64,000 nucleotides of DNA from Phallusia mammillata (lineage: Eukaryota). A program made the position numbers and the translations under genes. The DNA lies in assembly GCA_965637545.1 (NCBI GenBank), contig OZ281496.1, positions 18,290,001 to 18,354,000 on the forward strand, written 5' to 3'. Each line of letters opens with the position of its first letter. The stretch's first letter is position 1. The notes beneath the pieces are model-generated. The model saw only the letters and a program-made list of their open reading frames with translations, did not search any database and was not told the DNA's origin. This document shows, piece after piece, positions 2,142-34,500 of the stretch.

Positions 2142-2143
2142 TC

Positions 2144-2161
2144 TGGGGGCTCGTCCGGGAT
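2144..2161 (+). promoter_or_regulatory. Primer-binding site complementary to the tRNA-Pro 3' end
   Basis: TGGGGGCTCGTCCGGGAT 2 nt after the LTR end; mirror copy at 3585-3602 (-) and a related copy just inside the LTR at 9282. Confidence 0.85.
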
Positions 2162-2207
2162 CTGACTCAAAACGCGAAGTTGAACATTAACCCCTGTAAG
2201 ATCGGCA

Positions 2208-2561
2208 ATGGCGTCTGGATTGCAGTACGTGGAATTAGGGAAGCAATTGGGGCTCGTTGACGAAGAGCTACGCAAGTATGTGAAGAAGCAGATGAAAGAA
2301 GAACGCGACACTGCGCAGAGGAGACGCGATGCAGAGGCTGCGCAGTGGAGACGCGATGCCGAAGTTGCGCAGAGGAGACGCGATGCCGAGGTTGCGGTTG
2401 CGCGGAGAAGACTCGAAGCTACGAAGAGAAAACTTGAGGCCGAACGGGAATTTCGCGAGCACGAACTGGCTATGAAGAAGCTTGAATTGGAAGCTAAGCG
2501 CCGCCGTGCAGAAAAAACAAAGAGGGTTACAACAAATGCAGGCAAGTGTCCAGGTTTTTAA
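2208..2561 (+). pseudogene. Truncated gag N-terminus (coiled-coil, RRRDAE repeats)
   Basis: ORF MASGLQYVELGKQLGLVDEELRKYV... directly after the PBS; ends at the junction with the inverted half. Confidence 0.7.
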
Positions 2562-2571
2562 ACCTTTTAAC

Positions 2572-3538: not shown

Positions 3539-3604
3539 TGCCGATCTTACAGGGGTTAATGTTCAACTTCGCGTTTTGAGTCAGATCCCGGACGAGCCCC
3601 CAGA

Positions 3605-4089
3605 TGTCACGTTCCCGATTTCACGGGTACGCAAAAGTTTGGGACTGACTATCGTAAGTTCCTTAACAGCTAACGCTCGTGTACTCTGATCGGCAGCAAA
3701 ACGTTTCCTTTTATATTTTTTCACGTCCAACCACACGCAATCAAAACAACAAAAACAACAAAAACAACAATCCAACACTACTTCGCAGTTATCTCTATTC
3801 CAGTCTATATCATTCCATGTTATGTTCTTTAAATCGTTAGACGGGGGCGCTGATATACCTTGCATCACAATGATCGGGAAAAAGGCGTTAACTCGTTGTG
3901 ACCATTTCCTACAGATAAAACAATGAACACCGCAACGGGCAACGGCGACGCGGAAAAACTAGCACAGTAGAACAATGACGACACAATAGCGCCTGCAACG
4001 ATAGACTCTGGACGCACAGAAATTGTCCGTGATGCGTTGTAATTGGGTCGCAGGATATTGTCAAGGGGCGGTCTAGAACATTTGTGACA
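3605..4089 (-). repeat. Right LTR, inverted relative to the left LTR
   Basis: Reverse complement reads TGTCACAAATGTTCTAGACC...GGGAACGTGACA followed by the tRNA-Pro PBS. Confidence 0.9.
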
Positions 4090-6843: not shown

Positions 6844-9800
6844 ATGCATTTGTCTATACTGTACCGAATCTGTTTAGGTTTGACTGTCATTCTGTCACTT
6901 GTCGCCGTGTGCATGTGGAACCTTTCGGCTTTCACATCGACCGTTGCACCAAAAAAGGAGATCAACAAAGATGTTGGTAGCAAAGCTAACGATTTAACGG
7001 TAAGCGAAATTTTTGTAGGTCAAACGACAGATTTGTTGACATTAATATTTGCGAGCGTATTGTACCAGTTACTGGTAACATGCGAGTACATCAAACTCAG
7101 ACTTGTGAAGAATATTTAACATAACAAATGTATCTAAGAGCTTCCGGATAGTGAACAATGACACGTTCCCGTTTTCACGGGTACGCGAAAGATTGGGACT
7201 GACTATCGGAAGTTCCTTAACAGCTAACGCTCGTGTACTCTGATCGGCAGCAAACCTCTTTTCTTTAACATTTATTCACGTCCAACCACACGTAATCAAA
7301 ACAACAAACAAACAATCCAGCACTACTTCGCAGTTATCTCTCAGTTCTATCTTCTATATTATGTTCTGTTTTTTTTTTAAATCGTTAGATTGGGGCGCTT
7401 ATATATCTTGCATTACAATGATCGGGAAAAAGGCGTTAATTCGCTGTGACCATTTCCTACACATAAAACAATGAACTCTGCAACGGGCAACGGCGACGCG
7501 ATAAAACCGGGACACTACAACAATGATAACACAATAGCGCCTGCAACGATAGACTCCAGACGTACAGAAATTGTCCATGATCCGTGGTAATTGGGTCGCG
7601 CGATTTTGTCATAGGGCGGTCTAGAACATTTGTGACAAAACCCCGTTTTTAAAAGGAGATTTTCCTCGAACAAGAAAATCTCGCGCAATCTACGACAAAT
7701 GTTCCTGCAACTCATCAGTGCCAACCGAAGATCAAAGTTCTTGTTTGCCGAAGGTGTTGCTTTTTCCATCCACCGATTTCTTTCTTTGCTTTTTTCCTGC
7801 TTACTTCCGTACCTAAACCACGTTTGGAAATCCCTCCGAAAGCGACATGGCTTCGAATCTCGGAAGGATGACTCCGCAAATTCGTTACCTGACTGCATTT
7901 GTTGTTTCGTCTGTCGGCGGGTTGTCGTGGACGACAAGACAGGTATAAATGCGCTTTGAACGTTGCACTCACTGGTCGGCGCTAAAACGAGACTGTCATC
8001 AGTTGGTTCCTCGAAAACCTGTTGCAATGAAGAAATAGACATTCTCCTATCCAGCATTTGCAAATCAACACTGGGGCGATTCTGAACCAATTCTTGATCT
8101 TGCACATCGACGACTGTCTTTGATATGGCGCTCTGCTTCGTCGTCTTTTGTATTAAAGCAACAATCCCGCCTCCCTCTTCTGTATGTAATTGCATATTGA
8201 CCTGTTCCTGCGACAACTCTGCGTCTTGCCCCCTGGTCTTCGTTCGAATCGTGGTGTTCTTCTCTGTCGCTTGTTGTGTCACAGAACCTGACTCTTCTTT
8301 GTCAAACATCTCCACTTCCGTTTCAATCCGACCCTGCGACAAATCCTTAGTTTGCTCGTCTGGCTGTTTGACGTTTTTCTCCACTGAATCGCAGATTTCC
8401 GTCCTTTTAACAGAAGTTGTCACAAGACGTTTATTCATTGGCTCTGGAATGCGCTCTTGTTCGTCTTCTACCATGTGGACACGATCCACGTCGACTTTCT
8501 TCTTTACACAAATTTGGGACGACATAGTACTGTTTTCCCTCGGAAAAGCCGCAAGCAACTGCCTGTCTACGGCATTTATCTCATACATGCGTGTCGGTTG
8601 CTCTTGACACTTGCCTGCATTAGTTGTCACCCCGTTCGTTTTTTCTCTACGGCAGTTCCTCGTTTCCAACTCAAGCTTCTTCATAGCCAGTTCGTGCTCG
8701 CGGATTTGTTGTCGCTCTTTCCTTCCGGCCTCGAGTCTTTTCTTCATAGCCTCGTGTCTTCCCTTCGTAGCTTCGAGTCTTCTATGCGCAGCCGCAACCT
8801 CGGCATCGAGTTTCCTCTGCGCAGCCTCGGCATCACGTCTCCTCCGCGCAGCCTCATACTCGGCATCGCGTTTTCTCTGTGCAGTCTCGACATCGCATCT
8901 CCTCTGCGCAGCCTCGGCATCGCGTCTTCTCTGTGCAGTCTCGACATCGCATCTCCTCTGCGCAGCCTCGACATCGCATCTCCTCTGCGCAGCCTCGGCA
9001 TCACGTTTTCTCTGTGCAGTCTCGACATCGCATCTCCTCTGCGCAGCCTCGGCATCGCGTCTTCTCTGCGCAGCCTCGGCATCTTGTTGGAACTTTTGCT
9101 CTTCAAGTTCATGCTCACGGTCATGTTTCACCTGCTCCTCCACATGCTTGCGTAGCTCTTCATCAACATATTCCAATTGCTTTCCAATATCCAGATATTG
9201 TCTTGCAGACGCCATTGCCGATCTTACAGGGGTTAGTGTTTAACTTCGCGTTTTTAAGTCAGTTCCCGACGAGCCCCCAGATGTCACGTTCCCGTTTTCA
9301 CGGGTACGCGAAAGATTGGGACTGACTATCGGAAGTTCCTTAACAGCTAACGCTCATGTACTCTGATCGGCAGCAAACCTCTTTTCTTTAACATTTATTC
9401 ACGTCCAACCACACGTAATCAAAACAACAAACAAACAATCCAACACTACTTCGCAGTTATCTCTCAGTTCTATCTTCTATATTATGTTCTGTTTTTTTTT
9501 AAATCGTTAGATTGGGGCGCTTATATATCTTGCATTACAATGATCGGGAAAAAGGCGTTAATTCGCTGTGACCATTTCCTACAAATGAAACAATGAACTC
9601 TGCAACGGGCAACGGCGACGCGATAAAACCGGGACACTACAACAATGATAACACAATAGCGCCTGCAACGATAGACTCCAGACGTACAGAAATTGTCCAT
9701 GATCCGTGGTAATTGAGTCGCGTGATTTTGTCATAGGGCGGTCTAGAACATTTGTGAGAAACAAATTATTGCAAACGTTTTAATTATCTGCTGTACGCAT

Positions 9801-12800
9801 ACCATTATGGATCAGAATTGTTTCATCTTAATCGTGGATTAATTTTTGTAAGATGAAAGCGTATTTGATAAAAATATATACTTTTTCTTCGTAATCTGAA
9901 ACGTGCAGTTTTATTTTCGCGTGAGTGCGCGAAACGAACTAGTCATGTAATTTAAGTTGTCGCGAGCTCACGTATGCATTGTTGCAATACGGATCATGCG
10001 CTAACAAACCTTAAATTAAATACATTTAGCACATAAAATAAAATACACACTTAATTAACATTGTTTATTAAAAACAATACAACTATTCTATAGGAATGTT
10101 GGTATATGTAAGCTTTTTTAAAACTTTTTTATATGTGAAAGCTTTTTCAACTTTACGAAGACACTCTCTCATTAAGTGTTATAAACTATAGTTATCCCGA
10201 GATTGGGATTCCCAGGATCCCGACCACTGCTTTCTATTTCTAAGTGATGCATGTATTGAGTACTGCATTTATAAAATTACTAATTACACGAAATTCTCAA
10301 TCGAACTTATTGAGGATAGGATATTCGTGTGTTAGACATTCTTTTTATATTGAGAATAGGATATTCGTATGTTGACAATCTTTTTGAATTATCATCTTGC
10401 TGGTATCAAAAATATGCCAAATTATAGGAAAAAAGGCCTTTCTTTTACGCCGCTATTCCCACCTCCCATTCAAAAAATAAATTAATGTGGTACTCAGCGA
10501 TAGGAAAAGTGACCAGGTGTTGCATGACTAGTAAGAGGTTTAGAACCACTGGAATAGGCGAAGTAAATTTCGTGTTTAGTGTTCAAAATTGTTCACCACA
10601 TAGAGGATGTCTAATAATTTTGTGTTTTATCAAGCTTGCATAACTTTTTGTTTAATAGCAGCAAGTTTTTGAACTTGTCACTGAGCCGTTGCCGGAAGAA
10701 AATAGAAACATAACGCTAACGTTAAGAAAGAAGGAATACAAATGTAAGAAGCCGATTTTCAAGTTTGTGTATGTGAAGACTCATAAAACTGGTTCAACCA
10801 CTACGATGTGGCTACTTTATAACTTCATCAGAAAACATCGTTTATGGCAGGTAAGAATCTAAATCCTAACAAGATGGTGGTGCCCAAGGACGTCTATGAT
10901 TGCTAGCAGTAGTAAGATGTCCCGTACGATCTACAGTTCCGTGCAAGACATCTGGTTTCCTTGACCTTGACCTTGAAGGCCTCTTAAGACTTCCGCAGGA
11001 AGTCTTGGTTAGGTCTTGGTTTCCGACTTCCTCATCTTGAAGACGTCTTGTACATCAGGACTTCCCCTTTCTTGAAGATCAGGACTTCCCCTTTCTTGAA
11101 GGTGTCTTACCTTGTGCCCTTTCAAGTGTTTCCGACTTTTCTTACCTTTGGGGACAGGAAGTCGTGACTTTCAGGTGACGTTGCTAACCCTAACCTCTGC
11201 AGGTGTTTTTACGTGGAATTCCAAAGGAAGTGTGGTTTTGTGAAAGACTTGCGCATGTCTTAAGCCTGAAAGGTACCGCGCAGATACCTGTGTGTGACCT
11301 TGTTTAACCTTGAAGGTACCTGTGTTCAGGTGTTGTTGATCTTGGTTTAAGACTTTTAATTATTTGTTCTATGTAGGAATTGCTTTTGTGTTAATTCCTG
11401 TTTTCACAGAACATTTGTTTAGGTTTTGACGTAGTCAAATATATTTATTGATTTATTTGTTTGTTTGTTTGTTGCAAGAAAGCGGGTCGTGGCTTTCAAA
11501 CAACCAAGACAGTAAACCGCCAATAGATGGCGTGCGTCATAGACTTTTTAATCTGCGTTTCTATTGTCGTCTGCCAGCTGTCGAGTTTCACTGGATGAGC
11601 GAGTGCGCGTCGTCCGCCAGCTGTCGTGTTTCGCTGGATGAGCGAGCGCGCGCCGTGCTCGATTGCGTGTCGGATGAGCGGAGCGTCTCGTGCGCGGCGT
11701 TTTCGAAGGCGTTTCGAAGACAATCTAAGTCAAAAAATGTTACAATAAGTTTTATCGGGGTGCTCTACATAAGTATTTCACAACAACAACGCGCAATTAC
11801 ATCAGCTTTTGAAATAGGCGTTGCACGAAGCGATCGTTTGCACGGTAATTACTTGAAAAACAGTCTACAAAATCGTCAAGCGATATGTCACGCGCCATAG
11901 CCATAAGAAACAATCTAAGTCAAAAAATGTTACAATAAGTTTTATCGGGGTGCTCTACACAACTGTTTTGCGTCTGTTGGCACCGAACCTATTAAAATTT
12001 TAATTGTGCGGATATGGCGATCGATTTAACGTTAAAACTCGAGCCGGCCGCATTTTTGGTGAAATACGATACCTCGTTTCCTAAGGCACTGACTGATATG
12101 CTGTTACTAATACAGTCATTGCGCATATGTTATTACAGTAGTCCTATTTATTTGTGTCAGTTTTCATTCAAACGATTCCACGTGTATTTTATGAAAATCA
12201 CACACTTATATATACGAGCATAGAGAATGCATATTAGGGCTGTTATCAAATAATGGTTTTTAATTTTTCAAATAATCAAATAATTTTTTTCCTTTCGAAT
12301 CAAATAATCAAATAATTCAAATAATTTAGAATACCGGATACATAAGGCCCAGAGTCAAATAAGAATAGTTGAAATTACTAAACGCATTTTGTAAGCTCCT
12401 AGTCATTAAATCTAGGCTACATCCTTTTTTCTGTTTAAAATAATAAATTAATACATATAGAGACAAGCTTGAGTTATTCTCCGTAAATTGGCAAAACCAT
12501 ATGTAGACTACATATTCCGTGTGTATTTTTACGTTATTACAACAGCTTTTTCTTGGATACTGGCTGAATTGATTTGTGATCTATACCATTTCATTTACTT
12601 GCTTGAATAACTTTAATTATTCCAGGGTTTAACTAATACTGGAATGAAAACTAAATTGTCATGCTAATACTGGAATGAAAACTAAATTTTTTGTCCAACA
12701 TTTTTGGTGGGATGGGTAATGAACAACCGCAATTTCATAAAAATGTCACCAATGTGTTCAAATAAATTGATCTTAAACATATATCGAGGTTTACTGTGTA

Positions 12801-15800
12801 GAAAAATATTATTTGATTATTTGAAATGATTAAAAAAATTATTTGATAATTTTTTTCAAATAATTACAAATTTCAAATAATCAAATAATTATTTAATGGT
12901 GAAAATAACGGCCCAAATAGACGTAAAAAGCGACATGCTTTATTGTTCAAACGTTTCGGCAAATGCTCATGCCATCATCAGTGATATGAAGGCCACATCA
13001 ATTGCACCCATTTATATACACTTTAATCGCATAAAAGAATGATAAAAAGGTGCGCAGAAGCGAGGTGTAAGCCACCTGCGAGTGTGCGTCTGACCAAACA
13101 GGTGCAGAGCAACTACGACATACAATATATTTACAAACAAAGAAACAATAGTAGGACAGCACGTCACATCAAAAATACGCAATAAGTTAATTAGGTATTA
13201 AACAAATACAGAGGAACCGACTTAGAATCAACGTTTAATTCCGGTTTATAGCGTTGAATGAAAATTGATTCCAGTAACATTAGTCGATAGCGGTCCCTGG
13301 CTGTCCCAAGCACTTCCGGGTTTTTAAAGTCCACTACATGGTCTTTGTTGGCCTGAAGGTGTTGACACACCTCGGACGTTTCGATTTGTTGGTGTTCATG
13401 AACTCGCGTTCCAAGGTTTCGCCTGGTTTCTCCAATGTAGGTTTTTCCACAAGAACATTTCAGTCTGTAAACAACCGAATATTTTGATGTGACGTGCTGT
13501 CCTACTATTGTTTCTTTGTTTGTAAATATATTGTATGTCGTAGTTGCTCTGCACCTGTTTGGTCAGACGCACACTCGCAGGTGGCTTACACCTCGCTTCT
13601 GCGCACCTTTTTTATCTATCGTTTTTATGCGACGCTTGTTTCGCACCTTTTTATCATTCTTTTATGCGATTAAAGTGTATATAAATGGGTGCAATTGATG
13701 TGGCCTTCATATCACTGATGATGGCATGAGCATTTGCCGAAATGTTTGAACAATAAAGCATGTCGCTTTTTACGTCTATTTGGGCCGTTATTTTCACCAT
13801 TAAACTTATGAACAGATCCGTATATAGTGTTCCAAATAATTATTTGTTTGATAACAGCCCTAATACATATGTACATTGAAATAACCCATGCAACGCAAAG
13901 ACAAAATAAACATACATTAAAGAAAACACAAACAAAAAACAATTACCCTGACATCAAACTTTACAAGTGTACCTTCAAATATCTAAAGGATCAGTTGAAA
14001 TACCATCCGATTTAATTTTTCGTTTGCAATACAAATAGGTTAGGCCTTTTTTATATTGGTTATAAGTAAACATTTTTCCGTTTCTAAGCATAAAACCATT
14101 GCTGCAGGCAGTACAATCGTTTTGTGTTTTCAAAACATCTAAATAGTATTGCCGTCGCAAATCATCGATCTTTCCTTTACCCTAAAATTATTTTTTTCCG
14201 GTTTTCTATTGTCAGCCGAAAATTTCAGTTTGCTTTGCAGCATGGTTGCATAACCATAAACCATTGTAAGCCACGTCGGTTGCAAAAACAAAATCGGTAA
14301 AGTGTGATTACCCCGAGATTTAACCCTTACCCCAGCTCCAACTCTCGGTCTAAATCCTTATACCTTTGATAAAAAAAACACAGCACGGCTTGGATCTTAA
14401 CCTTCAAAGCGCCTTATTTTCAGGCCTCTCAAAAGGCTTGGCCACAAATCTGTCATATTGCTTGTTTGTTTTTATTTCAACGGTAGGTCAAGATCTGTAC
14501 AGATGTGATGGGGACAAAAACAACCCAGCAACTGATTAACAGGATTGCAGTCGGGTGTTGTACGATTATAAACAACGTTGGGTTGCTTATGCCGTTTGCA
14601 AACGAGTTGCAAATAAAACCCTGAGCTGCGATCATAAACTTGACAAAGTTAAAATGTGATCTATTATTGTGTGTAAACCTATCAGTGATGCTGAAACTGA
14701 TAAAAGGTCAATCCGCTAGTTCCCATAGCCAAACCCGTTTTTTGTTTTCGCGTGTGACAAAAATTTTACAATTGCATTTTAATGAAAAATACTGATTAGA
14801 AAAAATCTTTTGCAGAAACGCTGTCAAACTGATTGCGAAACTGCCTTTGATTAGGGTTGAGTTATCCGGATAACGGTTAACCGAGTAGATTTTTTGCTAT
14901 CCGATATCCAGATATTTTGGTCGGGTAACCGGATGACAAAGTAGGAAGTATTTTATCAATTTCAGAAAACCATACAATTAATGTGCAGTGAGAGAGATGT
15001 AACGAACGATTTCCTGTCTATCCAAATGTATTCACTTAGTTTTACCGATTACCGCTGGTAAATCGATAAAAGTATGTTATAAATGAAACGCAGTTCAAAT
15101 AGCTATTGCACGTATTGTAAGATGAGAAAATTGAAATATAGGCCCAGGACAATTTTTAATAGGGCAAAAGCCCTGTTTGTGACCTTTTTTCGCTCGGAAA
15201 ATGACCATAAAAGGGCAAAATGTGAAATGATTGATGTATCGTGCCGTTTGAATACATTACAGCAGCAATAAATACTATAAATGCGTAAACTTGTTATGTG
15301 CTGGACAAGTATAAACACTGAAACTAAATTTATTCTACACTTTTATGCAGTTCTAATAGACTTATTATATCTGGGTAACCTTACAGCTAGATTCAAAATA
15401 TCCGTTGTTCGAATAGCAGAAATTATACATATCGAACTTAGCCTACTTGTGATGCGTTTAAGTGTATTTGCCTGTAGAGACGTGTTTGCAATCGTGCTTC
15501 TTCCACATAACAACCGGGAACGGATTTAAGTCCACCAATCAATTGATGTAACCGTTTGTTGCGGTCGCGCTATGTGCTGCAATTTGTTTACACAAATGCA
15601 AACATAGTAAAAAAGTTTACCACCTACAAGCTTGAAGCTGTAAAATAGTTTTGATTGCACCAAATACAAAAGGTAACAAATGTTCTCTTATCCGTTTTAA
15701 TGCGACAAAAAACTCTTAATTTTTATTGCAGTCGGGTGCTGTACAATTATAAACAACTTTGGGTTGCTTATGTCGTTTGCAAACGAGTTGCAAATAAAAC

Positions 15801-18800
15801 CCTGAGCTGCGATCATAAACTTGACAAAGTTAAAACGTGATCTATTATTGTGATTACAGAAATGCAAACATAGTAAAAAAGTCAAGGGTTACCACCTACA
15901 AATTTGAGCTGTAAAATAATTTTGACACACTGAAGACAAAAGGTAACAAATGTTCTCTTATCCTATGAAAAAACTCTTAATTTTAGCATGAACTAATACG
16001 AACGTGCTAAAGCCAAACTGGTTGATACAGAAGAAAGTGCTCTGAAAGAACACCTACACTTTATTTTTAAAGTATTGCATTGCACATGCAAACAACACAT
16101 CGTTTTACTTTTATTCACACAAATACTACATTGTTACTCAGCCAAATAGCCTGAACCGTACCCGAACCCGCGAACAGTGTACAGTCAAAATTCATTGGGA
16201 GTTAGGCAATGAAGATGATGGATAGAATGAAAATTAAACGAAAGGGGATTTGAACCAGTTTATAAAATCAGAACAAAACCCGAATCCACAAACATAGATT
16301 TATTAAAACCTGAACCGAACCCGAAACCGTAAAAACAAAGTGAACCCGAACCGAACTGAACCTGAACCGATATGACAAGCGGTTAGACTCCCTGTTTAAG
16401 AATGAATTGGCGTATAATTAAATTCTGAACACTTTGGTTGGCTTATACTGTGCATTATGGTCAGGGTTTTGTCTTTTACTATGTCTGTTGTTTGGCGGTC
16501 ATCTTGATACGGTGTATTGTTGTCTTGGGCATAGCCATCACGAATGTGCTTTCGGTATGTATCTGATTGCGGCTATGTGGCAAGTGATTGCCTGTTAAGT
16601 GCACATTTGTGTTACTACAAGTGTTTCTGCACGTTCTATGANNNNNNNNNNNNNNNNNNNNNNNNNNNNNNNNNNNNNNNNNNNNNNNNNNNNNNNNNNN
16701 NNNNNNNNNNNNNNNNNNNNNNNNNNNNNNNNNNNNNNNNNNNNNNNNNNNNNNNNNNNNNNNNNNNNNNNNNNNNNNNNNNNNNNNNNNNNNNNNNNNN
16801 NNNNNNNNNNNNNNNNNNNNNNNNNNNNNNNNNNNNNNNNNCCCTGTTTCCACACAATTGTGCAATCGTAAGAAAATGTGATGCAACAATTGGAAGAGCC
16901 GGTTCAACTATAAATCGAACTTTTCATGTTCTGTGCGACGTTTTATGAAGCGAAATTTATAAATTTAACCTGTAAAAAGTGTAATTTATTGCGCTTCTTT
17001 ATAATCCTTTATCATAAATGTCCAATTTTGAGCCTGAATTACGTTTTTCTTTCATTGGAATTTGTAAATTCAGCTGTAGTCTTGGTTAGGCTTCGAACAA
17101 AGTTGTTTTAGCATATATCTGATAAAGTTTCAGCGGTTTCCAGCAAATCCTGTGTTTGCCCGCAATAAAAACTTGGTCGGTTTTCGGTTATAGTAAAAAT
17201 TCGAGCTTGCGCGTTGTTATATTTAGATTGGCTAATCGAATATATTGTGTTTCTTTACATTGCATTGATACCCTGGTTGTGTTGTGTGTGGAGCGGGGAG
17301 AAATGGTGCAATCAAATACCAGGGGCACGTTGAGACCTGCTCCAATCGTATGCATAAAACCGCATGAATTCGGTTGTTGAAAAGTGTATTTGAAACAAAC
17401 GCTATGCATTCCGCCAAAGCTGTATTTGCCGAATTGAACCTAAACAGTAAACGACGTTATCTCTTTGTTACATAACTAACAGAGGCGAATTTTACCGGAC
17501 GTGTTGTGTCACTTTAGGGTTGCTAATATTGGTTCCATGTCGCGAGTTAGGGTCATGTAGCCATCCCTGAGAGTGAAAAACGTAACACTGCAAAATTAGT
17601 TTTCCGGAAAAATCAAAACTTTTTGAGTCATCTAATTGAAGTGGTTAAATTCTGTTTGGGCCATATTTTTGTGGTGAATGACACGTAAATTTGATAGGTC
17701 AGGTCTCAACATGCCCCTGGTATTTGATTGCATCATTTCTCCCCGCTCCACACACAACACAACCAGGGTATCAATGCAATGTAAAGAAACACAATATTAT
17801 TCGATTAGCCAATCTAAATATAACAACGCGCAAGCTCGAATTTTTACTATAACCGAAAACCGACCAAGTTCTTATTGCGGGCAAACACAGGATTGCTGGA
17901 AACCGGCTGAAACTTTATCAGATATATGCTAAAACAACTTTGTTCGAAGCTTAACCAAGATTACAGCTGAATTTACAAATTCCAATGAAAGAAAAACGCA
18001 ATTCAGGCTCAAAATTGGACATTTATGAAAAAGGATTATAAAGAAGCGCAATAAATTACACTTTTTACAGGTTAAATTTGTAAAATTTCGCTTCATAAAA
18101 CGTCGCACAGAACATGAAAAGTTCGATTTATAGTTGAACCGGCTCTTCCAATTGTTGCATCACATTTTCTTACGATTGCACCATTGTGTGGAAACAGGGC
18201 TCTCAAGAGAAGAAACAAATATGCTGGTACAAGTCAATTTCTGCCCCCCTTCACTAAAGTCATGTCTATAAAAGTTTATTCAGTTGGGGAATAGTTTATG
18301 CTCCGAGGATGTAATGAACAAGCATTTAATACGTTTATGCGTCCACGAAAACAAACAAAAGCAGGTTGGCCATTGGAAATAAGTGCGTAGAGATTCTTTG
18401 AAAAATGCTTTTAATTTGACAAATACAAAGACAGAACACCAACCTCTTCAAATGTAAACGTCTTCACATACACACACACACACATAGCTGTCGCTTTATA
18501 AACTTTAGCAAAATGATCCAAAGAGGTATCTCGCTTATAGTTACAAAGCTGTGACCAAATCAAATACGTGTAACAAATACCGTTTTAACGTCATAGAACG
18601 TGCAGAAACACTTGTAGTAACACAAGTGTGCACTTAACAGGCAATCGCTTGCCACATAGCCGCAATCAGATACATACCGAAAGCACATTCGTGATGGCTA
18701 TGCCCAAGACAACAATACACCTTATCAAGATGACCGCCAAACAACAGACATAGTAAAAGACAAAACCCTGACCATAATGCACAGCATATACCAACCAAAG

Positions 18801-21800
18801 TGTTCAGATTTTAACAATACGCCAGTTCTTTCATGTTACACCACAATATTTACGCGACTTCCTTACTTACCAAACAACGGACATAGCTGTGACATACAAA
18901 AACTAGGACCGGCTTGAATTTTTTTTTTCGGACATGTCCGGGTAATTTCGCTATAACTTACGCATGCGCCGACGTAACAATAAAAAAACGTGTAGAATAC
19001 GCAACGAAGCATAGAGTTGCACTAACATAGGGTTACCAGACATCCGAAGTTTCCCGGACATGTCCGAAAATACCGCGTAAAATCTGAGTCCGGAAATAAT
19101 TTGCAAAAACATTCTTAAACAGGGAATCGAACCGATTGTCATATCGGTTCAGGTTCGGTTCTGGTTCACTTTGTTTTTACGGTTTCGGGTTCGGTTCAGG
19201 TTTTAATAAATCTATGTTTGTGGATTCGGGTTTTGTTCTGGTTTTATAAACTGGTTCAAATCCCCTTTCGTTTAATTTTCATTCTATCCATCATCTTCAT
19301 GGCCTAACTCCCAATGAATTTTGACTGTACACTGTTCGCGGGTTCGGGTACGGTTCAGGCTATTGGCTGAGTAACAATGTAGTAAAATAATACATTTACA
19401 TGCTTCGGTTAGGAAGAAATTGTGATGGTTTTAAAAGTTTTCAAATTTTCTTAAATTACCGAGGTGTAATTCACATTTTGCGGACGAATTTTTTTCAAAT
19501 TCTTTTAGTTTTTCCCCTGAACTAAGGGTGGAATTTACGTGGCACTAAGTAGCAACATTTTTGTTGGCAATACATTTGGGTAATAACTACTTCCTAACTT
19601 GTTGTGAATAATTTAGAAACACACTAACACAAAGGTGGATCCAAATTTTCATGCACGCCGGCAATTTCATGTGTAGGCTTTACTGTTAAATACACAATTT
19701 TGTGACCAAAAAAGATTTTTTGAAAAAGCGATGGTATAGAAGCCTAACACACACAGATGTCAAAATTATCTTTATCGACGTGATTCTGAAAAGTCACGCT
19801 TTGGACGTCTGTAGAGGCGTTTTTTGTTTGTTTGCTAGTTTCGAAAAATATCGATCTTTCATTAAACAGTACATGTTGGTGAAAAAGTTAATTTGTGTGA
19901 ATAAAAGTAAAACGATGTGTTGTTTGCATGTGCAATGCAATACTTTAAAAATAAAGTGTAGGTGTTCTTTCAGATCACTTTCTTCTGTATCAACCAGTTT
20001 GGCTTTAGCGCGTTCGTATTAGTTCATGCTAAAATTAAGAGTTTTTTCATAGGATAAGAGAACATTTGTTACCTTTTGTCTTCAGTGTGTCAAAATTATT
20101 TTACAGCTCAAATTTGTAGGTGGTAACCCTTAACTTTTTTACTATGTTTGCATTTCTGTAATCACAATAATAGATCACGTTTTAACTTTGTCAAGTTTAT
20201 GATCGCAGCTCAGGGTTTTATTTGCAACTCGTTTGCAAACGACATAAGCAACCCAAAGTTGTTTATAATTGTACAGCACCCGACTGCAATAAAAATTAAG
20301 AGTTTTTTGTCGCATTAAAACGGATAAGAGAACATTTGTTACCTTTTGTATTTGGTGCAATCAAAACTATTTTACAGCTTCAAGCTTGTAGGTGGTAAAC
20401 TTTTTTACTATGTTTGCATTTGTGTAAACAAATTGCAGCACATAGCGCGACCGCAACAAACGGTTACATCAATTGATTGGTGGACTTAAATCCGTTCCCG
20501 GTTGTTATGTGGAAGAAGCACGATTGCAAACACGTCTCTACAGGCAAATACACTTAAACGCATCACAAGTAGGCTAAGTTCGATATGTATAATTTCTGCT
20601 ATTCGAACAACGGATATTTTGAATCTAGCTGTAAGGTTACCCAGATATAATAAGTCTATTAGAACTGCATAAAAGTGTAGAATAAATTTAGTTTCAGTGT
20701 TTATACTTGTCCAGCACTTAACAAGTTTACGCATTTATAGTATTTATTGCTGCTGTAATGTATTCAAACGGCACGATACATCAATCATTTCACATTTTGC
20801 CCTTTTATGGTCATTTTCCGAGCGAAAAAAGGTCACAAACAGGGCTTTTGCCCTATTAAAAATTGTCCTGGGCCTATATTTCAATTTTCTCATCTTACAA
20901 TACGTGCAATAGCTATTTGAACTGCGTTTCATTTATAACATACTTTTATCGATTTACCAGCGGTAATCGGTAAAACTAAGTGAATACATTTGGATAGACA
21001 GGAAATCGTTCGTTACATCTCTCTCACTGCACATTAATTGTATGGTTTTCTAAAATTGATAAAATACTTCCTACTTTGTCATCCGGTTAACCGACCAAAA
21101 TATCTGGATATCGGATAGCAAAAAATCTACTCGGTTAACCGTTATCCGGATAACTCAACCCTAATCAAAGGCAGTTTCGCAATCAGTTTGACAGCGTTTC
21201 TGCAAAAGATTTTTTCTAATCAGTATTTTTCATTAAAATGCAATTGTAAAATTTTTGTCACACGCGAAAACAAAAAACGGGTTTGGCTATGGGAACTAGC
21301 GGATTGACCTTTTATCGGTTTCAGCATCACTGATAGGTTTACACACAATAATAGATCACGTTTTAACTTTGTCAAGTTTATGATCGCAGCTCAGGGTTTT
21401 ATTTGCAACTCGTTTGCAAACGGCATAAGCAACCCAACGTTGTTTATAATCGTACAGCACCCGACTGCAATCCTGTTAATCAGTTGCTGGGTTGTTTTTG
21501 TCCCCACCACATCTGTACAGATCTTGACCTACCGTTGACATAAAAACAAACAAGCAATATGACAGATTTGTGGCCAAGCCCTTTGAGAGGCCTGAAAACA
21601 AGGCGCTTTGAAGGTTAAGATTCAAGCCGTGCTGTGTTTTTTTTTATCAAAGGTATAAGGATTTAGACCGAGAGTTGGAGCTGGGGTAAGGGTTAAATCC
21701 CGGGGTAATCACACTTTACCGACTTTGTTTTTGCAACCGACGTGGCTTACAATGGTTTATGGTTATGCAATCATGCTGCAAAGCAAACTGAAATTTTCGG

Positions 21801-24800
21801 CTGACAATAGAAAACCGGAAAAAAATAATTTTGGGGTAAAGGAAAGATCGATGATTTGCGACGGCAATACTACAGTGCCGGCAAAAAAAATCTTTGCATT
21901 CGGTCGGCAAAAAAAAACTTTGCATGTCAATTTTGCATAAGTTCTTAGCTTACTCTTTCCGCCAAAAGCATTGTATTACAGAAACGCTTCTAGTTATGTC
22001 ATAAGCTACTCTCTGGCTACACTTCGCCACAAAGCCATTGCTCTGCGTGCCTAATGTTGCTTTACAGCTCCGTGATTCGTAAGGTCGGTGAAATCACACA
22101 ATATTTTTTATTTTCCTAAAGTTTCGAGGTCTTGCAAAATTTTATTCAAACACGAAAATGGGTCGAAAGAAGATTCAAATGGAAAAAAAAACCTTATGCC
22201 TTGACTTTGTTAGAGAATGGAGGTTCTGTGACTGCTGTAGCCAGAGATATTTGGGGTCTCAAAAGAGGCAATTTATTAATTAAAAGGTCAGCGGCGTAAT
22301 TGCCACACGGGATGGTTCAGAAGAGAAAGTCAGGTTCTGGCGCACCTAAGAAGACTTCGCCAAGTACGGATAAGCTTTTGAAGTGTGAAGTAACCTCATA
22401 CCCATCTATAACCGCCGTTGATTTACAAAAACAAGCACCCTGAGCTTCTCCACAACGTTTTAAACAGGACAATCGTCATCGATTTTTGAAGGATCTTAAG
22501 CTACCCTGTCGCCAGGCAGCAAAGAAGCCCATGCTTAGTGCAGCAATCAAAGAATCTCCCTTCTTTAACAAAGTCAAGGCACAAGATTTTTCTTCCATTT
22601 GCATCTTTTTTCGACCCATTTTAGTGCTTGAAAATTTTTTTGCAAGACCTCGAAATTTCGGGAAAATAAAAAATATTGTGTGATTTCACCGACCTTACTA
22701 ATCACGAAGCTGTAAAGCAACATTAGGCACGCAGAGCAATGGCTTTGCGGCGAAGTGTAGCCAAACAGTAGCTTATGACATAACTAGAAGCGTTTTTGCA
22801 ACACAATGCTTTTGGCGGAAACAGTAAGCTAAGAACTTATGCAGAATTTACATGTAAAGTTTTTTTTTGCCGACCGAATGTAAAGATTTTTTTTGGCGGC
22901 ACTGTATTTAGATGTTTTGAAAACACAAAACGATTTTACTGCCTGCAACAATGGTTTTATGCTTAGAAACGGAAAAATGTTTACTTATAACCAATATAAA
23001 AAGGCCTAACCTATTTGTATTGCAAACGAAAAATTAAATCGGATGGTATTTCAACTGATCCTTTAGATATTTGAAGGTACACTTGTAAAGTTTGATGTCA
23101 GGGTAATTGTTTTTTGTTTGTGTTTTCTTTAATGTATGTTTATTTTGTCTTTGCGTTGCATGGGTTATTCCAATGTACATATGTATTCTCTATGCTCGTA
23201 TATATAAGTGTGTGATTTTCATAAAATACACGTGGAAAAACATTTTTTGACTTAGATTGTTTCTTATGACTATGGCGCGTGACATATCGCTTGACGATTT
23301 TGTAGACTGTTTTTCAAGTAATTACCGTGCAAACGATTGCTTCGTGCAACGCCTATTTCAAAAGCTGATGTAATTGCGCGTTGTTGTTGTGAAATACTTT
23401 TGAAAATAAATAAAACGCGTTTAATGCCGCGCACGAGACGCTCCGCTCATGCGACACGCAATCGAGCACGGCGCGCGCTCGCTCATCCAGTGAAACTCGA
23501 CAGCTGGCAGACGACAATAGAAACGCAGATTAAAAAGTCTATGACGCACGCCATCTATTGGCGGTTTACTGTCTTGGTTGTTTAAAGCCATGACCCACTT
23601 TCTTGCAACAAACAAACAAATAAATAAATTAATAAATATATTTGACTACGTCAAAACCTAAACAAATGTTCTGTGAAAACAGGAATTAACACAAAAGCAA
23701 TTCCTACATAGAACAAATAACTAAAAGTCTTAAACCAAGATCAACAACACCTGAACACAGGTACCTTCAAGGTTAAACAAGGTCACACACAGGTAGCTGC
23801 GCGGTACCTTTCAGGCTTTGGACTTGCGCAAGTCTTTCACAAAACGATACTTCCTTTGGAATTCCACGTAAAAACACCTGCAGAGGTTAGGGTTAGCAAC
23901 GTCACCTGAAGGTCACGACTTCCTGCCCCCAAAGGTAAGAAAAGTCGGAAACACTTGAAAGGGCACAAGGTAAGACTTCCTTCGGAAGTCTTAAGACATC
24001 TTCCAGAAAGGCGAAGTCCTGATGTACAAGACGTCTTCAAGATGAGGAAGTCGGAAACCAAGACGTAACCAAGACTTCCTGCGGAAGTCTTAAGACGTTT
24101 TCAAGGTCAAGTTCAAGGAAACCGGATGTCTTGCACGGAACTGTAGATCGTACGGGACATCTTACTACTACTATTGCTGTTTTTTGATTTTTCGGGGTTA
24201 CCTCGATGTTATGGCCCTCATTTAAACAATTTATATTCAAAGACGTTATTATCTACCGAAAATGATATACTGAGTGCTACAAACATGCTGGAAACAACGC
24301 ACAAAGTTTTAATTGATAAAGTCACACCAGTGCAGCTGGTGACGCGATATAGGCCTCTCAACAAACTAAAGCGCTTCCCAACAGACTGAGTTAAGAAAAC
24401 TAACTAAAGGCTAGAGGGTAATGTTTAAAATTCCAGTTTTAATTACTGTCAGCTATAATAGTAATTTCAAAGGCATGTTGCTTGGTATGTACAACAATTA
24501 GCATTAATACACAAACAAAGGAATCTTGATAAAGCACTTCTATTTCCTTTGTTTTTAACCGTTTGTACACACTTTTTTCGGTGTGGTCCACAAAGTTTGT
24601 CGAAATAAACCAAGAACAATGAGTAAAAAGTTAGAAAGTTTTTTTTGGAACGTTTACTTTCAATATCTGATAATAAAATCAATACGAGAATATGACGACA
24701 TTTTGCAGTTTACAACCCACGTTTATCCTCAAGATCTTGTTGGAGGATATCCTGGTCGGTTTAAATGCAAGTTTCGTTTTCCAAAAAACGCTTCCATTAA

Positions 24801-26556
24801 TGTTCACCATTTAAGGTTTGATGGAGAAGAAATGAAGAAATGTTTTCATCCCGAGACAAGGTGTTGTGTTTTAAAATAGATTTGAAAAGGAATATACGCG
24901 TGATTCGAATATTTTGTTAGATGGAAAACCTTTACTCATCCAAGCCCATTTCGCCCTTGTAACGAATTTTAGTTTTGCTTGATTGTTGCAGATATTTTAC
25001 AATCATTCGCCAACCATGGAACCATTTTCTTTCGGCGTACAACTTTTTTCCCGATTGGGAAAAGCGAACTCTCAACTGCGGTGGAATGCCGACTGTATAC
25101 ATTCAACAGGGTGAAAAGATGGATCCTATAAAATTTTTGTCAAAAGCTGCTGTCTTGTTAAATTCGTCAGTTCCTTTTTATTTTAGGTATTTTTTCACTT
25201 TGTCTCAACCCGTTAACGACCCGGTTGTTGAAAAAAAGAAAATGGATATAATTTTCTAATTACTTGGGTATTAAAGTATAAACGAGTGGTTATCAACTTA
25301 AACGTAGTGAAAAAGTAAAACGTTAAAAATAGGCTATTTCCTACCTTGTTTCTAAATTATATCACTCTGAGAGTATAAGATAAAATATTTGAAAACTATG
25401 TAAAGATGTTTTACGCAGATTTCGAAATTATCAATCCCATGATTTGGGAATAGATCCGATGTTAAAGGACGTCAATGAGATTGAAAGCCAAATACAGGAA
25501 TTGGATAAAAACATGGATCTAGTAATGTTACTGGAATATTTTGACGAGTCTTTAATACTGTTAAAGGTTCGCTATGTCACAATCCTCCGTCTGATACTCC
25601 TAACAAACTGGAGTGCCGTTATCTGCTTATTCTTATTATCAGCTGTGCTGATGTGGGTTTGTTGGTCGAAATCGTATGTTCAGTCCGCAGTTAATTATTT
25701 TTTTCGAAGAATATTGTTCGATTTCAAGACTTGGACAAAAGTGCATCGACCAGAAGTCATAATTTTAATAAAAAAATATCATTGTCGTAAAGCGTAGGTG
25801 CCTAATTTTTCCACACAAATTTAGCCCTTTTCCAAAAGTTGACTTTCATGAGTAATGACTTGAACAGCTCGAAGCATTTATAAATGAAAAAATATAATTT
25901 GAAAGGCTCTCTAAAAGCAACATCAAACGCAAAAAAACACAACACTTGCTTTTTTATTAGGATTTGCTTTGTTTTGATTGGGATGTTTTGAATCAAGTTC
26001 GTCACAGTAACAAACGTTACTACAAAGAAAAGACGTTACAAAATGAAGAGGATAAGAAAAACTTTGAGCAGCTTTACAACATTGTACGTATATATATAAG
26101 TGTGTTGACATATTTCTTTTATTCTGACTTACACTTCATTTTGTTTTGATTTTCGTTAAAAATCGTTGAAATCGAAGTAAATTTAAAATGTTTTTTTTTA
26201 TAATGTCTTCTTCGGAACAAACTAAAAGTGGATTTTGTGAGTTTGTATAAATTAGAAGATGTACAATTGTGGTGTTTGAAGAACAACCGTTTTTATTTTT
26301 ACAGGACATTGCACTGTACGATTACTTCAACAAAACCTTCTGGAAACGAGTTGAAGACTACGGACGGGACAGAATGGCTCAAAATCTAGAAATACTTCGT
26401 AAAAGACAAAATAAACCTATAACTTTCCCATCACTTGGTCGCCGACCAAAACCACAGGTGGATTCCCAACTAAAAGCGGAAATTCAAACTTATATGTTTG
26501 AGAACAACGGAAAATGTGTCTACCCGGGTTGGAAAGAGCCGCTGTACATTCCATAG
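6844..26556 (+). CDS. GAL3ST: Galactose-3-O-sulfotransferase family gene, copy A (intact, 405 aa, type II membrane protein)
   Basis: Exons 6844-6999 (TM anchor MHLSILYRICLGLTVILSLVAVCMW), 10659-10850 (5'-PSB motif YVKTHKTGSTT), 24709-24860, 24992-25186 (3'-PB motif YFTIIRQPWNHFLSAYNFF), 25419-25566 (DLVMLLEYFDESLILLK), 25961-26083 (DLLCFDW), 26305-26556; all GT-AG and phase-compatible, total 1218 nt. Family-level assignment only; orthologue number not determinable. Confidence 0.88.
7515..9215 (-). CDS. 566-aa gag-derived ORF (gag N-terminus fused to a low-complexity region, running into the 3' LTR)
   Basis: ORF track; starts just after the PBS; no pol motifs. Confidence 0.65.
   Translation of the reverse strand: MASARQYLDIGKQLEYVDEELRKHVEEQVKHDREHELEEQKFQQDAEAAQRRRDAEAAQRRCDVETAQRKRDAEAAQRRCDVEAAQRRCDVETAQRRRDAEAAQRRCDVETAQRKRDAEYEAARRRRDAEAAQRKLDAEVAAAHRRLEATKGRHEAMKKRLEAGRKERQQIREHELAMKKLELETRNCRREKTNGVTTNAGKCQEQPTRMYEINAVDRQLLAAFPRENSTMSSQICVKKKVDVDRVHMVEDEQERIPEPMNKRLVTTSVKRTEICDSVEKNVKQPDEQTKDLSQGRIETEVEMFDKEESGSVTQQATEKNTTIRTKTRGQDAELSQEQVNMQLHTEEGGGIVALIQKTTKQSAISKTVVDVQDQELVQNRPSVDLQMLDRRMSISSLQQVFEEPTDDSLVLAPTSECNVQSAFIPVLSSTTTRRQTKQQMQSGNEFAESSFRDSKPCRFRRDFQTWFRYGSKQEKSKERNRWMEKATPSANKNFDLRLALMSCRNICRRLREIFLFEENLLLKTGFCHKCSRPPYDKIARPNYHGSWTISVRLESIVAGAIVLSLL
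8784..9083 (-). repeat. 27-bp coding tandem repeat (RRRDAEAAQ / RRCDVETAQ), about 11 units
   Basis: Directly visible repeats gcatcgcgtctcctctgcgcagcctcg and variants. Confidence 0.9.
12947..12984 (-). ncRNA. Minimal type I hammerhead ribozyme motif
   Basis: Reverse complement TCA-CTGATGA-T-GGCA-TGAGCATT-TGCC-GAAA-CGTT-TGA; palindromic stem III (AACGTT). Confidence 0.7.
13191..13463 (-). pseudogene. GIY-YIG endonuclease C-terminal fragment (Penelope)
   Basis: Manual translation LKCSCGKTYIGETRRNLGTRVHEHQQ...LLESIFIQRYKPELNVDSKSVPLYLFNT*. Confidence 0.9.
13712..13749 (+). ncRNA. Minimal type I hammerhead ribozyme motif
   Basis: TCA-CTGATGA-T-GGCA-TGAGCATT-TGCC-GAAA-TGTT-TGA (one change in stem III). 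Confidence 0.62.
16642..16841. other. Assembly gap (200 N)
   Basis: N run; by symmetry it should correspond to about 18200-18590 of the right arm. Confidence 0.98.
17700..24172 (-). repeat. Right arm of the giant inverted repeat
   Basis: Starts CAGGTCTCAACATGCCCC (mirror of 17322-17339); ends at the Maverick-type terminus. Confidence 0.92.
21873..22904 (+). mobile_element. Internally deleted Tc1/mariner element private to the right arm
   Basis: TA TSD (single TA in the left arm); TIRs of about 270 bp starting CAGTGCCG / CGGCACTG; frameshifted Tc1 DNA-binding-domain remnant (RKSGSGAPKKTS...LKDLKLPCRQAAKKPML); no DDE domain. Confidence 0.88.
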
Positions 26557-34463: not shown

Positions 34464-34500
34464 GAAATATATATTTCACCTATGTGGCATCATCAGTTCC
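34464..34500 (-). ncRNA. Minimal hammerhead ribozyme motif
   Basis: Reverse complement GGAA-CTGATGA-TGCCACATAGGT-GAAA-TATATA-TTTC. Confidence 0.6.

What the first reader, a model, noticed from the sequence alone, without database searches (positions are those of the whole stretch)
10899..24178. 13.3-kb foldback element with Maverick/Polinton termini: arms of about 6.4 kb around a 360-bp loop
Seen: the ends read ATTGCT|AGCAGTAGTAAGATG... and ...CATCTTACTACTACT|ATTGCT. The arms 10905-17339 and 17700-24172 are reverse complements, the loop is 17340-17699, and paralogous introns B and C lack the element. Established: 5'-AG termini made of short tandem repeats (AGT)n plus a 6-bp TSD are the signature of Mavericks/Polintons, whose TIRs are usually hundreds of bp and whose interior encodes pPolB, integrase, ATPase and capsid. 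Here almost the whole element is TIR and no such genes are visible. Inference: a snap-back (copy-back) defective Maverick genome, analogous to defective-interfering genomes of linear DNA viruses, made by template switching during protein-primed replication and then integrated in trans by a helper's integrase. This would be a candidate non-autonomous class of giant palindromic Mavericks.
Basis: partly seen in the sequence, partly recalled or inferred. Interest (0 to 1): 0.9.

Follow-up and report, generated by a model that had tools for sequence, protein, structure and literature searches.

The report
Gene-less palindromic element with Maverick-type ends
A 13.3-kb insertion in a gene's intron consists almost wholly of two mirror-image 6.4-kb arms, has no genes, and shows the end motif and 6-bp target duplication typical of Maverick/Polinton virus-like transposons; it looks like a folded-back, defective derivative of one, but a single copy cannot show how it arose.

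Summary
An insertion at 10905-24172 is flanked by a perfect 6-bp repeat (ATTGCT). It ends in AGC-AGT-AGT / ACT-ACT-ACT. It consists of two collinear inverted arms (10905-17339, 17700-24172) around a 360-bp unique centre. Two tandem paralogues of the host gene lack it.

The arms are real, separately evolving DNA. They differ by 2.0% over 4,258 aligned bases. Each carries its own nested transposon with its own target duplication. The N gap (16642-16841) lies in the left arm, and both of its sides are collinear with the right arm.

Nothing in the element looks coding. The longest stop-free stretch is what chance gives, and Pfam, PHROGs, Rfam and one protein search found nothing.

The (AGT)n/(ACT)n ends plus a 6-bp duplication match the published Maverick signature. 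The arms are 4.4 times the longest terminal repeat in that survey. Other foldback or 6-bp-duplicating families I could document do not fit.

Filing it as a non-autonomous Maverick-type element is reasonable (about 0.6). The snap-back replication origin is only one of several untested routes. I found no other copy and no gene-bearing partner, and I was barred from fetching one. I score interest as moderate: a new variant of a known kind.

The parts
10899..10904 (.). Left copy of the 6-bp flanking direct repeat (ATTGCT), read as the target-site duplication
   Evidence: It is identical to 24173-24178. A 4-bp reading (TTGC, with T...A added to the ends) is also possible.
10905..17339 (+). Left arm (6,435 bp including 200 N); its outer end reads AGC-AGT-AGT-AAG
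   Evidence: It is collinear with the reverse complement of 17700-24172.
10905..11204 (+). Left terminal domain holding a cluster of GGAAGT(C) motifs, partly as palindromic pairs, and a 24-bp tandem repeat (11046-11101)
   Evidence: Motif density is 20 per kb in the two terminal 300-bp stretches against 0.39 per kb in the rest of the window.
11932..12174 (+). Segment present only in the left arm (243 bp)
12235..13862 (.). Nested hAT-like non-autonomous element, present in the left arm only. Its ends are TAGGGCTG...CAGCCCTA and its 8-bp target duplication reads ATGCATAT / ATACATAT.
   Evidence: The right arm shows the empty site. Internal inverted repeats are seen.
16642..16841 (.). Assembly gap (200 N) inside the left arm, corresponding to 391 bp of the right arm (18200-18590)
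   Evidence: Both sides of the gap are collinear with the right arm. The gap was not filled.
17340..17699 (.). Unique centre ('loop') of 360 bp with sharp borders and no microhomology at the junctions
   Evidence: It has no other match in the window.
17700..24172 (-). Right arm (6,473 bp); its outer end reads ...CTT-ACT-ACT-ACT
18833..19109 (.). Segment present only in the right arm (277 bp), with its own short inverted repeat
19385..19891 (.). Segment present only in the right arm (507 bp); whether it is an insertion here or a deletion in the left arm is undecided
21873..22904 (.). Nested Tc1/mariner-like foldback MITE, present in the right arm only. It has CAGTG... ends, a TA target duplication and 367-bp arms of its own.
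   Evidence: The left arm shows the empty site.
23873..24172 (-). Right terminal domain holding the mirror cluster of GGAAGT(C) motifs
24173..24178 (.). Right copy of the 6-bp flanking direct repeat (ATTGCT)
10659..10850 (+). Host exon (galactose-3-O-sulfotransferase family). The splice donor GT is at 10851, and the element starts 54 bp into the intron.
   Evidence: PF06990, E = 1.2e-5.

Best explanation
This is a non-autonomous, gene-less transposable element of the Maverick/Polinton type. Nearly its whole length is one terminal segment present twice, in mirror image.

Shown:
- It is an insertion into an intron.
- It is bounded by a 6-bp duplication.
- It ends in (AGY)(AGT)2 / (ACT)3.
- It is palindromic apart from 360 bp.
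- It is non-coding.
- It is old enough to have taken up separate nested transposons in each arm.

Inferred:
- It entered as one unit through a retrovirus-like (rve) integrase supplied by a gene-bearing Maverick. That enzyme makes the 6-bp duplication and needs two like ends.
- The palindrome arose when a one-ended or already defective linear copy was copied back on itself. This could happen by a strand switch, or by self-priming of a displaced strand during protein-primed strand-displacement synthesis. Copying back is the simplest way for a fragment with one end to regain two identical ends that can act as origin and integrase substrate.
- The progenitor was probably already non-coding.
- After insertion the arms drifted apart, with patches kept alike by arm-to-arm gene conversion.
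For: - Structure and borders.
- Absence from two paralogous introns.
- Independent evolution of the arms. There are private nested elements with their own 8-bp and TA duplications, plus 86 substitutions and 15 indel events over 4,258 columns. This rules out a read or polishing artefact.
- No coding capacity. The longest stop-free stretch is 156 aa, against 138 +/- 22 in simulations. Pfam gave nothing on 76 six-frame pieces, nor did PHROGs, Rfam or a protein search.
- Published signature. PMC8097293 reports the 5'-(AGT)2//(ACT)2-3' end motif with a perfect 6-bp duplication, terminal repeats of 46-1,447 bp, and end repeats read as the 'jumping-back' device of protein-primed replication.
- Precedent for growth of the terminal repeat in this superfamily. 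Butterfly polintons have about 2-kb terminal repeats that duplicate capsid and protease genes (bioRxiv 10.1101/2025.02.07.637071).
- Snap-back palindromes are a recognised class of defective genome of linear viruses (PMC13506859; PMC8235507).
Against: - Only one copy is visible. The terminal 15-mer occurs nowhere else in the window.
- No Maverick gene lies in the element or anywhere in the 64 kb.
- The end motif is documented for vertebrates, whereas this window shows no CpG depletion (observed/expected about 1.0). The host is therefore probably not a vertebrate.
- The paralogues do not confirm the duplication exactly, and a 4-bp reading is possible.
- Arm divergence is uneven: about 4% in the outer part, about 0.9% in the middle, about 2.5% in the inner part (chi-square p = 2e-7). 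A single copy-back event predicts even divergence unless later gene conversion is added.
- The dense GGAAGT(C) motif array near both ends resembles the binding-site arrays of cut-and-paste transposons.
- A contig break (N gap) lies 0.5-0.7 kb from the centre.
Confidence: 0.4

Rival explanations
1. The family and integration are the same, but the palindrome formed in place after insertion. An ordinary short-repeat, non-autonomous Maverick-type element suffered an internal break. Repair then copied one half from the other, priming from the terminal repeat, and replaced the interior with a mirror copy.
For: The outer roughly 1 kb is about 4% diverged, while the adjoining 13.9-16.1 kb block is about 0.9%. 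This is as expected if the outer repeat is older than the copied interior. Growth of terminal repeats by inverted internal duplication is documented in Galileo (PMC3573991).
Against: The innermost 1.2 kb is again more diverged (about 2.5%, and 4.2% at 16405-16654), which a simple two-step history does not predict. The borders of the centre show no microhomology. No short-repeat version is available for comparison.
Confidence: 0.2
2. It is a foldback-type cut-and-paste DNA transposon of another, possibly undescribed, family. Its likeness to Maverick ends is a coincidence, and its subterminal motif array binds a DDE transposase.
For: There are 12 GGAAGT(C) motifs in the two terminal 300-bp stretches, a 50-fold enrichment, partly as palindromic pairs. 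No Maverick gene remnant was found. This genome holds several small foldback MITEs. The authors of PMC3573991 state that terminal-repeat length is not a reliable guide to superfamily.
Against: The families I could document do not fit. Foldback/Mutator-like Tm1 makes 9-bp duplications (PMC3169594). Galileo/P makes 7 bp. The nested hAT-like element here makes 8 bp with TAGGG ends. Ginger2/Tdd makes 6 bp, but at RTATAY targets and with TGTNR ends (PMC2836005). The chance that an unrelated end reads (AGY)(AGT)2 is very small.
Confidence: 0.2
3. The centre of the structure is an assembly product. The two ends and at least 5.7 kb of each arm are real, but the join across the 200-N gap is wrong or incomplete, and the true interior is longer and not palindromic.
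For: A contig break lies inside the left arm, close to the centre. The 200 N do not match the 391 bp of the right arm. Long inverted repeats are hard to assemble (my own knowledge).
Against: Both sides of the gap continue the same collinear inverted alignment. The inner palindrome 16842-17339 / 17700-18199 and the centre lie within one gap-free stretch and differ by 1.8%, so this is not a duplicated read. The exon order of the host gene and the paralogues fix the orientation of both flanks.
Confidence: 0.1
4. Two complete copies of one element inserted head to head, or a host inverted duplication that is not a transposon.
For: None beyond the inverted symmetry itself.
Against: There are no internal copies of the terminal sequence near the centre. 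The arms have no similarity to the paralogous introns or to the rest of the window. The borders are sharp, with a 6-bp duplication and defined inverted ends.
Confidence: 0.03

Closest known systems
Maverick/Polinton elements (polintoviruses, adintoviruses)
   Same: A 6-bp target duplication, ends made of AGT/ACT trinucleotide repeats, terminal inverted repeats, and an overall length (13.3 kb) inside the 12.7-24.6 kb range (PMC8097293).
   Different: It has none of the defining genes (pPolB, rve integrase, ATPase, protease, capsid proteins). Its inverted repeats are 6.4 kb against 46-1,447 bp (mean 402). Its interior is reduced to 360 bp.
Butterfly polintons with about 2-kb gene-containing terminal repeats (bioRxiv 10.1101/2025.02.07.637071)
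   Same: They show that terminal repeats in this superfamily can grow inwards and duplicate internal sequence.
   Different: Those elements keep a full gene set and a large unique interior. Here the repeat takes up 97% of the element and nothing is coding.
Snap-back / copy-back defective genomes of linear viruses (AAV snapback genomes, PMC8235507; review PMC13506859; adenovirus type 3 defective DNA, cited there as Daniell and Mullenbach 1978, not read)
   Same: One genome end is present twice in mirror image around a short unpaired centre. There is no coding capacity, and the cis-acting ends are retained.
   Different: Those are free replicating molecules seen in infected cells. This one is a chromosomal insertion with a target duplication. 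A replicative origin is inferred for it, not observed.
Foldback-type DNA transposons (Drosophila FB; Tm1 of root-knot nematodes; Galileo of the P superfamily)
   Same: They are elements made mostly of long inverted repeats, often non-coding, with arrays of short motifs near the ends.
   Different: Their duplications are 9 bp (Tm1/FB) or 7 bp (Galileo). Their repeats are at most about 1.25 kb and are built largely of tandem subrepeats. The arms here are complex sequence with only two short tandem arrays.
Ginger2/Tdd transposons
   Same: A 6-bp target duplication made by an integrase-like transposase related to that of Mavericks (PMC2836005).
   Different: Ginger2 ends follow TGTNR and its targets are RTATAY. 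Here the ends are AGCAG/AGTAG and the target is ATTGCT.

Membership tests
Maverick/Polinton | 6-bp target-site duplication | tested here: met
   ATTGCT lies on both sides. Caveats: a 4-bp reading is possible, and the paralogue empty sites do not contain the motif.
Maverick/Polinton | Ends 5'-AG...CT-3' built of short tandem repeats, e.g. (AGT)2//(ACT)2 | tested here: met
   The left end reads AGC-AGT-AGT and the right end ACT-ACT-ACT. The motif is as described in PMC8097293, but that description is for vertebrate elements.
Maverick/Polinton | Terminal inverted repeats of about 0.05-1.5 kb around a long unique interior | tested here: not met
   Inverted repeats are present but measure 6.4 kb each, and the interior is 360 bp. 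The published range is 46-1,447 bp.
Maverick/Polinton | [quoted passage not shown] | tested here: not met
   No ORF exceeds chance length. No Pfam hit at E < 0.01 among 76 six-frame pieces.
Maverick/Polinton | Encodes a retrovirus-like (rve) integrase | tested here: not met
   Same searches. The rve domains in the window belong to LTR retrotransposons outside the element.
Maverick/Polinton | Encodes capsid proteins, a packaging ATPase and a protease | tested here: not met
   Pfam coverage of Maverick capsid proteins is uncertain, but the lack of any long open frame is decisive.
Non-autonomous derivative of a Maverick family | Shares its terminal sequence with a gene-bearing element in the same genome | not testable with these tools
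   No eukaryotic genome collection is searchable by DNA here. Fetching an animal virus-like element by pattern or look-up is barred, so the step was referred.
Snap-back defective genome | One end duplicated in mirror image around a short unpaired centre, with cis ends kept and genes lost | tested here: met
Snap-back defective genome | Generated during replication of a free linear genome | not testable with these tools
   This cannot be read from one integrated copy. The uneven arm divergence neither requires nor excludes it.
Foldback / Mutator-like (FB, Tm1) | 9-bp (8-10 bp) target duplication, with terminal repeats built of tandem subrepeats | tested here: not met
   The flanks match over 6 bp only. 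There are only a 24-bp x 2.3 and a 43-bp x 2.1 array. Criteria from PMC3169594.
Galileo / P superfamily | 7-bp (P: 8-bp) target duplication | tested here: not met
   Criterion from PMC3573991.
hAT | 8-bp target duplication and YARNG ends | tested here: not met
   The flanking 8-mers differ and the ends read AGCAG/AGTAG. The criterion rests on my own knowledge. The nested element at 12235-13862 does meet it.
Ginger2/Tdd | 6-bp duplication of RTATAY targets and TGTNR ends | tested here: not met
   The length fits, but target ATTGCT and ends AGCAG do not. Criteria from PMC2836005.

The most novel reading that the evidence does not exclude
The element is a chromosomal fossil of a snap-back defective genome of a Maverick. 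On this reading, a replication by-product with two identical origin-bearing ends and no genes was integrated by a helper's integrase. It would be the first member of a palindromic, non-autonomous kind of Maverick derivative. It would also be indirect sequence evidence that Mavericks pass through a free, end-primed replicating stage.
Probability: 0.3. Interest if true: 0.75.

Novelty: new variant of a known kind. Interest (0 to 1): 0.5.

Why it matters
Replication of Mavericks as free linear molecules primed from their ends is a model drawn from their genes and end repeats, not something observed directly. Defective snap-back genomes are a typical by-product of that kind of replication. An integrated one would be a sequence-level trace of it.

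It would also show that Maverick integration can act on gene-less passengers. That would add a non-autonomous, palindromic form to a superfamily known mostly from full-length and decayed copies. In the survey I read, 96% of vertebrate copies are defective through decay, not through this architecture.

Whatever its origin, a 6.4-kb inverted repeat lying 54 bp inside a transcribed intron can fold into a long double-stranded RNA. It is also a potential site of genome instability. Both are inferences.

If it proves to be a single oddity, or to belong to another family, it is an ordinary decayed transposon with unusually long inverted repeats.

Tried and rejected
Searches that found nothing:
- Other copies through spurious ORFs. 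A protein search with the longest arm frame (11430-11897) gave no hit.
- Identifying the host. An exact look-up of the 566-aa ORF at 7515-9215 gave nothing, and so did a homology search with it. A search with the last exon of paralogue C (residues 26-108 of 58971-59294) also gave nothing. The organism stays unknown. The only clue is the absence of CpG depletion.
- Coding remnants. Pfam on 50 right-arm and centre pieces and on 26 left-arm pieces of at least 50 aa gave best E-values of 0.016 and 0.036, which is what that many queries give by chance. PHROGs gave nothing.
- RNA genes. Rfam at gathering threshold and at E <= 0.1, and ARAGORN, found nothing.
- Microhomology at the arm-centre junctions: none.
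- CpG decay as the cause of the higher divergence of the outer arm: rejected, since only 3 of 25 substitutions there are in CpG context.
- Internal or additional copies of the terminal sequence in the window: none.
- Literature. The listed top results of two searches (15 of 106 papers; 15 of 254) included no paper describing a foldback, snap-back or copy-back Polinton/Maverick. One search found no description of palindromic non-autonomous ones. The founding paper (Kapitonov and Jurka 2006) and Daniell and Mullenbach 1978 are not held.

Readings considered and rejected:
- Two head-to-head complete copies: there are no inner termini.
- A host inverted duplication: the arms are unlike host DNA in the window.
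- A chimeric-read artefact: the arms differ and carry private insertions.

Full report
OBSERVATION. The quoted ends and flanks are in the sequence. ATTGCT lies at 10899-10904 and again at 24173-24178. The element between them (10905-24172, 13,268 bp) begins AGCAGTAGTAAGATG. The reverse complement of its other end reads AGTAGTAGTAAGATG. End positions 4-47 are identical between the two ends.

A self-comparison gives eight collinear inverted blocks that cover the element from both ends to a 360-bp unique centre at 17340-17699. The centre has sharp borders and no other match in the window.

The left and right flanks are adjacent in two paralogous introns in the same window (about 39905 and about 57075), which lack the element. 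Those paralogues also lack nine bases that include the ATTGCT motif. They show that the element is an insertion, but they do not independently confirm the duplication. Their introns are only about 80% identical to this one, so a small indel is unremarkable.

A second reading of the borders is possible: a 4-bp duplication TTGC with one more base, T...A, on each end. It needs two extra coincidences where the 6-bp reading needs one. I rate it the less likely, and only weakly so.

THE GAP. The 200 N at 16642-16841 lie in the left arm, 0.5-0.7 kb from the centre. Sequence to the left of the gap (16400-16641) pairs with 18832-18591. Sequence to the right (16842-17339) pairs with 18199-17700. Order and orientation therefore continue across the gap as expected for an unbroken arm.

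The right arm has 391 bp where the left has 200 N. The N run is thus a placeholder, and its true length and content are unknown. No reading frame crosses it. I did not fill it or look its letters up.

REAL OR ARTEFACT. The arms are not copies made by an assembler or a chimeric read. Over 4,258 aligned columns they differ by 86 substitutions (2.0%) and 15 indel events. Each arm also holds its own nested transposon, while the other arm shows the empty site:
- a 1,628-bp hAT-like element (12235-13862; TAGGG-type ends; 8-bp duplication) in the left arm;
- a 1,032-bp Tc1/mariner-like foldback MITE (21873-22904; CAGTG ends; TA duplication) in the right arm.

Three more arm-specific segments (243, 277 and 507 bp) exist. 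Both outer ends are anchored in unique flanks whose orientation is fixed by the host gene's exons and by the paralogues.

The weak point is the centre. The claim that nearly everything is repeat depends on the join across the gap. However, the inner 498-bp palindrome and the centre lie in one gap-free stretch, and those inner arms differ by 1.8%.

CONTENT. Nothing in the element looks coding.
- The longest stop-free stretch is 156 aa, found in the left arm only. Composition-matched simulations give 138 +/- 22 aa, and 17% of them reach 156.
- Pfam on 76 six-frame pieces of at least 50 aa gave only chance-level scores. No polymerase, integrase, ATPase, protease or capsid family appeared.
- PHROGs, Rfam and a tRNA scan were blank.
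- A homology search with the longest frame was blank.

The similarity between the arms dates only their last homogenisation. The insertion itself is bounded by the split of paralogue A from B and C, at about 20% pairwise intron divergence. That is too little time to erase about 4.6 kb of genes beyond profile detection. The sequence was therefore most probably non-coding when it was inserted. This is an inference.

Two features are unexplained. First, the GGAAGT(C) motif is 50 times denser in the two terminal 300-bp stretches than elsewhere, partly as palindromic pairs. Second, arm divergence is uneven: about 4% in the outer part, about 0.9% at 13.9-16.1 kb, and about 2.5% in the inner part (chi-square p = 2e-7). 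CpG decay does not account for the second feature.

FAMILY. Barreat and Katzourakis (PMC8097293) report three things for vertebrate Mavericks. Their commonest end motif is 5'-(AGT)2//(ACT)2-3', together with perfect 6-bp duplications. Their terminal repeats span 46-1,447 bp (mean 402). The end repeats are taken to serve 'jumping back' in protein-primed replication. A second source gives 13-25 kb overall length, 100-1,500-bp repeats and 5-8-bp duplications.

The ends and duplication here match that signature. The chance of an unrelated end reading this way is very small.

Other families I could document fail:
- Foldback/Mutator-like Tm1 makes 9-bp duplications.
- Galileo makes 7 bp.
- Ginger2/Tdd makes 6 bp, but with TGTNR ends at RTATAY targets.
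- hAT makes 8 bp (own knowledge; the nested element illustrates it).

Against full membership, every gene that defines a Maverick is absent, and the inverted repeats are 4.4 times the published maximum. The motif description I could read concerns vertebrates, while this window has no CpG depletion. No Maverick gene lies elsewhere in the window; its integrase domains belong to LTR retrotransposons.

I therefore file it as working like a non-autonomous Maverick-type element, with probability about 0.6. I do not file it as a demonstrated member of a particular Maverick family.

MECHANISM. Shown: a single insertion event with two like ends and a 6-bp duplication, a near-complete palindrome, no genes, and later independent decay of the arms.

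Inferred: integration in trans by a helper's integrase, and origin of the palindrome by copy-back of one end. A fragment that keeps only one end of a linear, end-primed replicon can regain two working ends only by being copied back on itself. This is why snap-back forms recur among defective genomes of linear viruses. Growth of terminal repeats inside this superfamily has a precedent in butterfly polintons, whose roughly 2-kb repeats duplicate capsid and protease genes.

A single event predicts even divergence between the arms, which is not seen. Gene conversion between arms has to be added. The least-diverged block is bounded by two right-arm-only segments, which would fit conversion being limited by heterology, but this is not shown.

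RIVALS.
- (a) The palindrome grew in place after insertion, by break repair that copied one half from the other. The older-looking outer kilobase fits this. The again more diverged inner kilobase does not.
- (b) It belongs to another, undescribed foldback cut-and-paste family. The motif array and the lack of Maverick remnants fit this. The end motif and duplication length do not.
- (c) The centre is mis-assembled.
- (d) It is two copies head to head, or a host duplication. This is rejected because there are no inner termini and no likeness to host sequence.

One copy cannot separate the main reading from (a) and (b).

NOVELTY AND WEIGHT. Among the listed top results of the literature searches, no paper described a foldback, snap-back or palindromic Maverick/Polinton. 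The library is incomplete, and the founding 2006 paper is not held.

If the main reading holds, this is a new variant of a known kind. It would also be a sequence trace of the free replicating stage that is assumed for Mavericks. As it stands, it is a well-verified unusual structure with a plausible but unproven family link and an open origin. I score interest at 0.5.

NOT DONE.
- The step is referred.
- A joined-exon search of the host gene was left out, and exons were searched singly.
- The host organism could not be identified.

Noticed in passing
window 10659-26553, 39669-42083, 56840-59294 (+ strand): There are three tandem galactose-3-O-sulfotransferase-like genes (Pfam PF06990 on single exons). 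Copies B and C have 95.5% identical introns, while A is about 80% identical to either. Only A carries the element, 54 bp after a splice donor.
   Followed up: partly
window 12235-13862 and 21873-22904: Two different small non-autonomous transposons are nested in opposite arms. One is hAT-like, with an 8-bp duplication. The other is a Tc1/mariner-like foldback MITE with a TA duplication. Neither has another copy in the window.
   Followed up: yes
window 10905-11204 and 23873-24172: A dense array of GGAAGT(C) motifs lies near both ends: 12 copies in 600 bp against 25 in the other 63 kb, partly as palindromic pairs. It resembles an array of protein-binding sites, and the core matches ETS-type sites (own knowledge). 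Its role is unknown.
   Followed up: partly
window 7515-9215 (-), 2035-3711: A 566-aa ORF rich in RRDAEAAQ-like repeats has no Pfam family and no homologue in the protein collection. Partial copies lie nearby as an inverted pair (2035-2359 / 3387-3711).
   Followed up: partly
window 32436-33991 (-), 46841-49274 (-), 51846-54773 (+), 63274-63993 (-): Retrotransposon remnants are present: a LINE-type reverse transcriptase; two BEL/Pao- or Gypsy-like pol regions (RT, RNase H, rve), one with a DUF7041 gag-like ORF; and an rve fragment at the window's end. None is Maverick-like.
   Followed up: partly
window 34394-35155: Another small foldback structure (166-bp arms, 95% complementary, 430-bp spacer) is unrelated in sequence to the finding.
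   Followed up: no
window 37980-39037: Overlapping ORFs on both strands carry short peptide repeats (VANVPPAHH-like). None has a Pfam family. They are probably a tandem DNA repeat rather than a gene.
   Followed up: no
whole window: The CpG observed/expected ratio is about 1.0 at 39% G+C, so this is not a vertebrate-type methylated genome. The single gap is exactly 200 N, which looks like a fixed scaffolding placeholder (own knowledge).
   Followed up: partly
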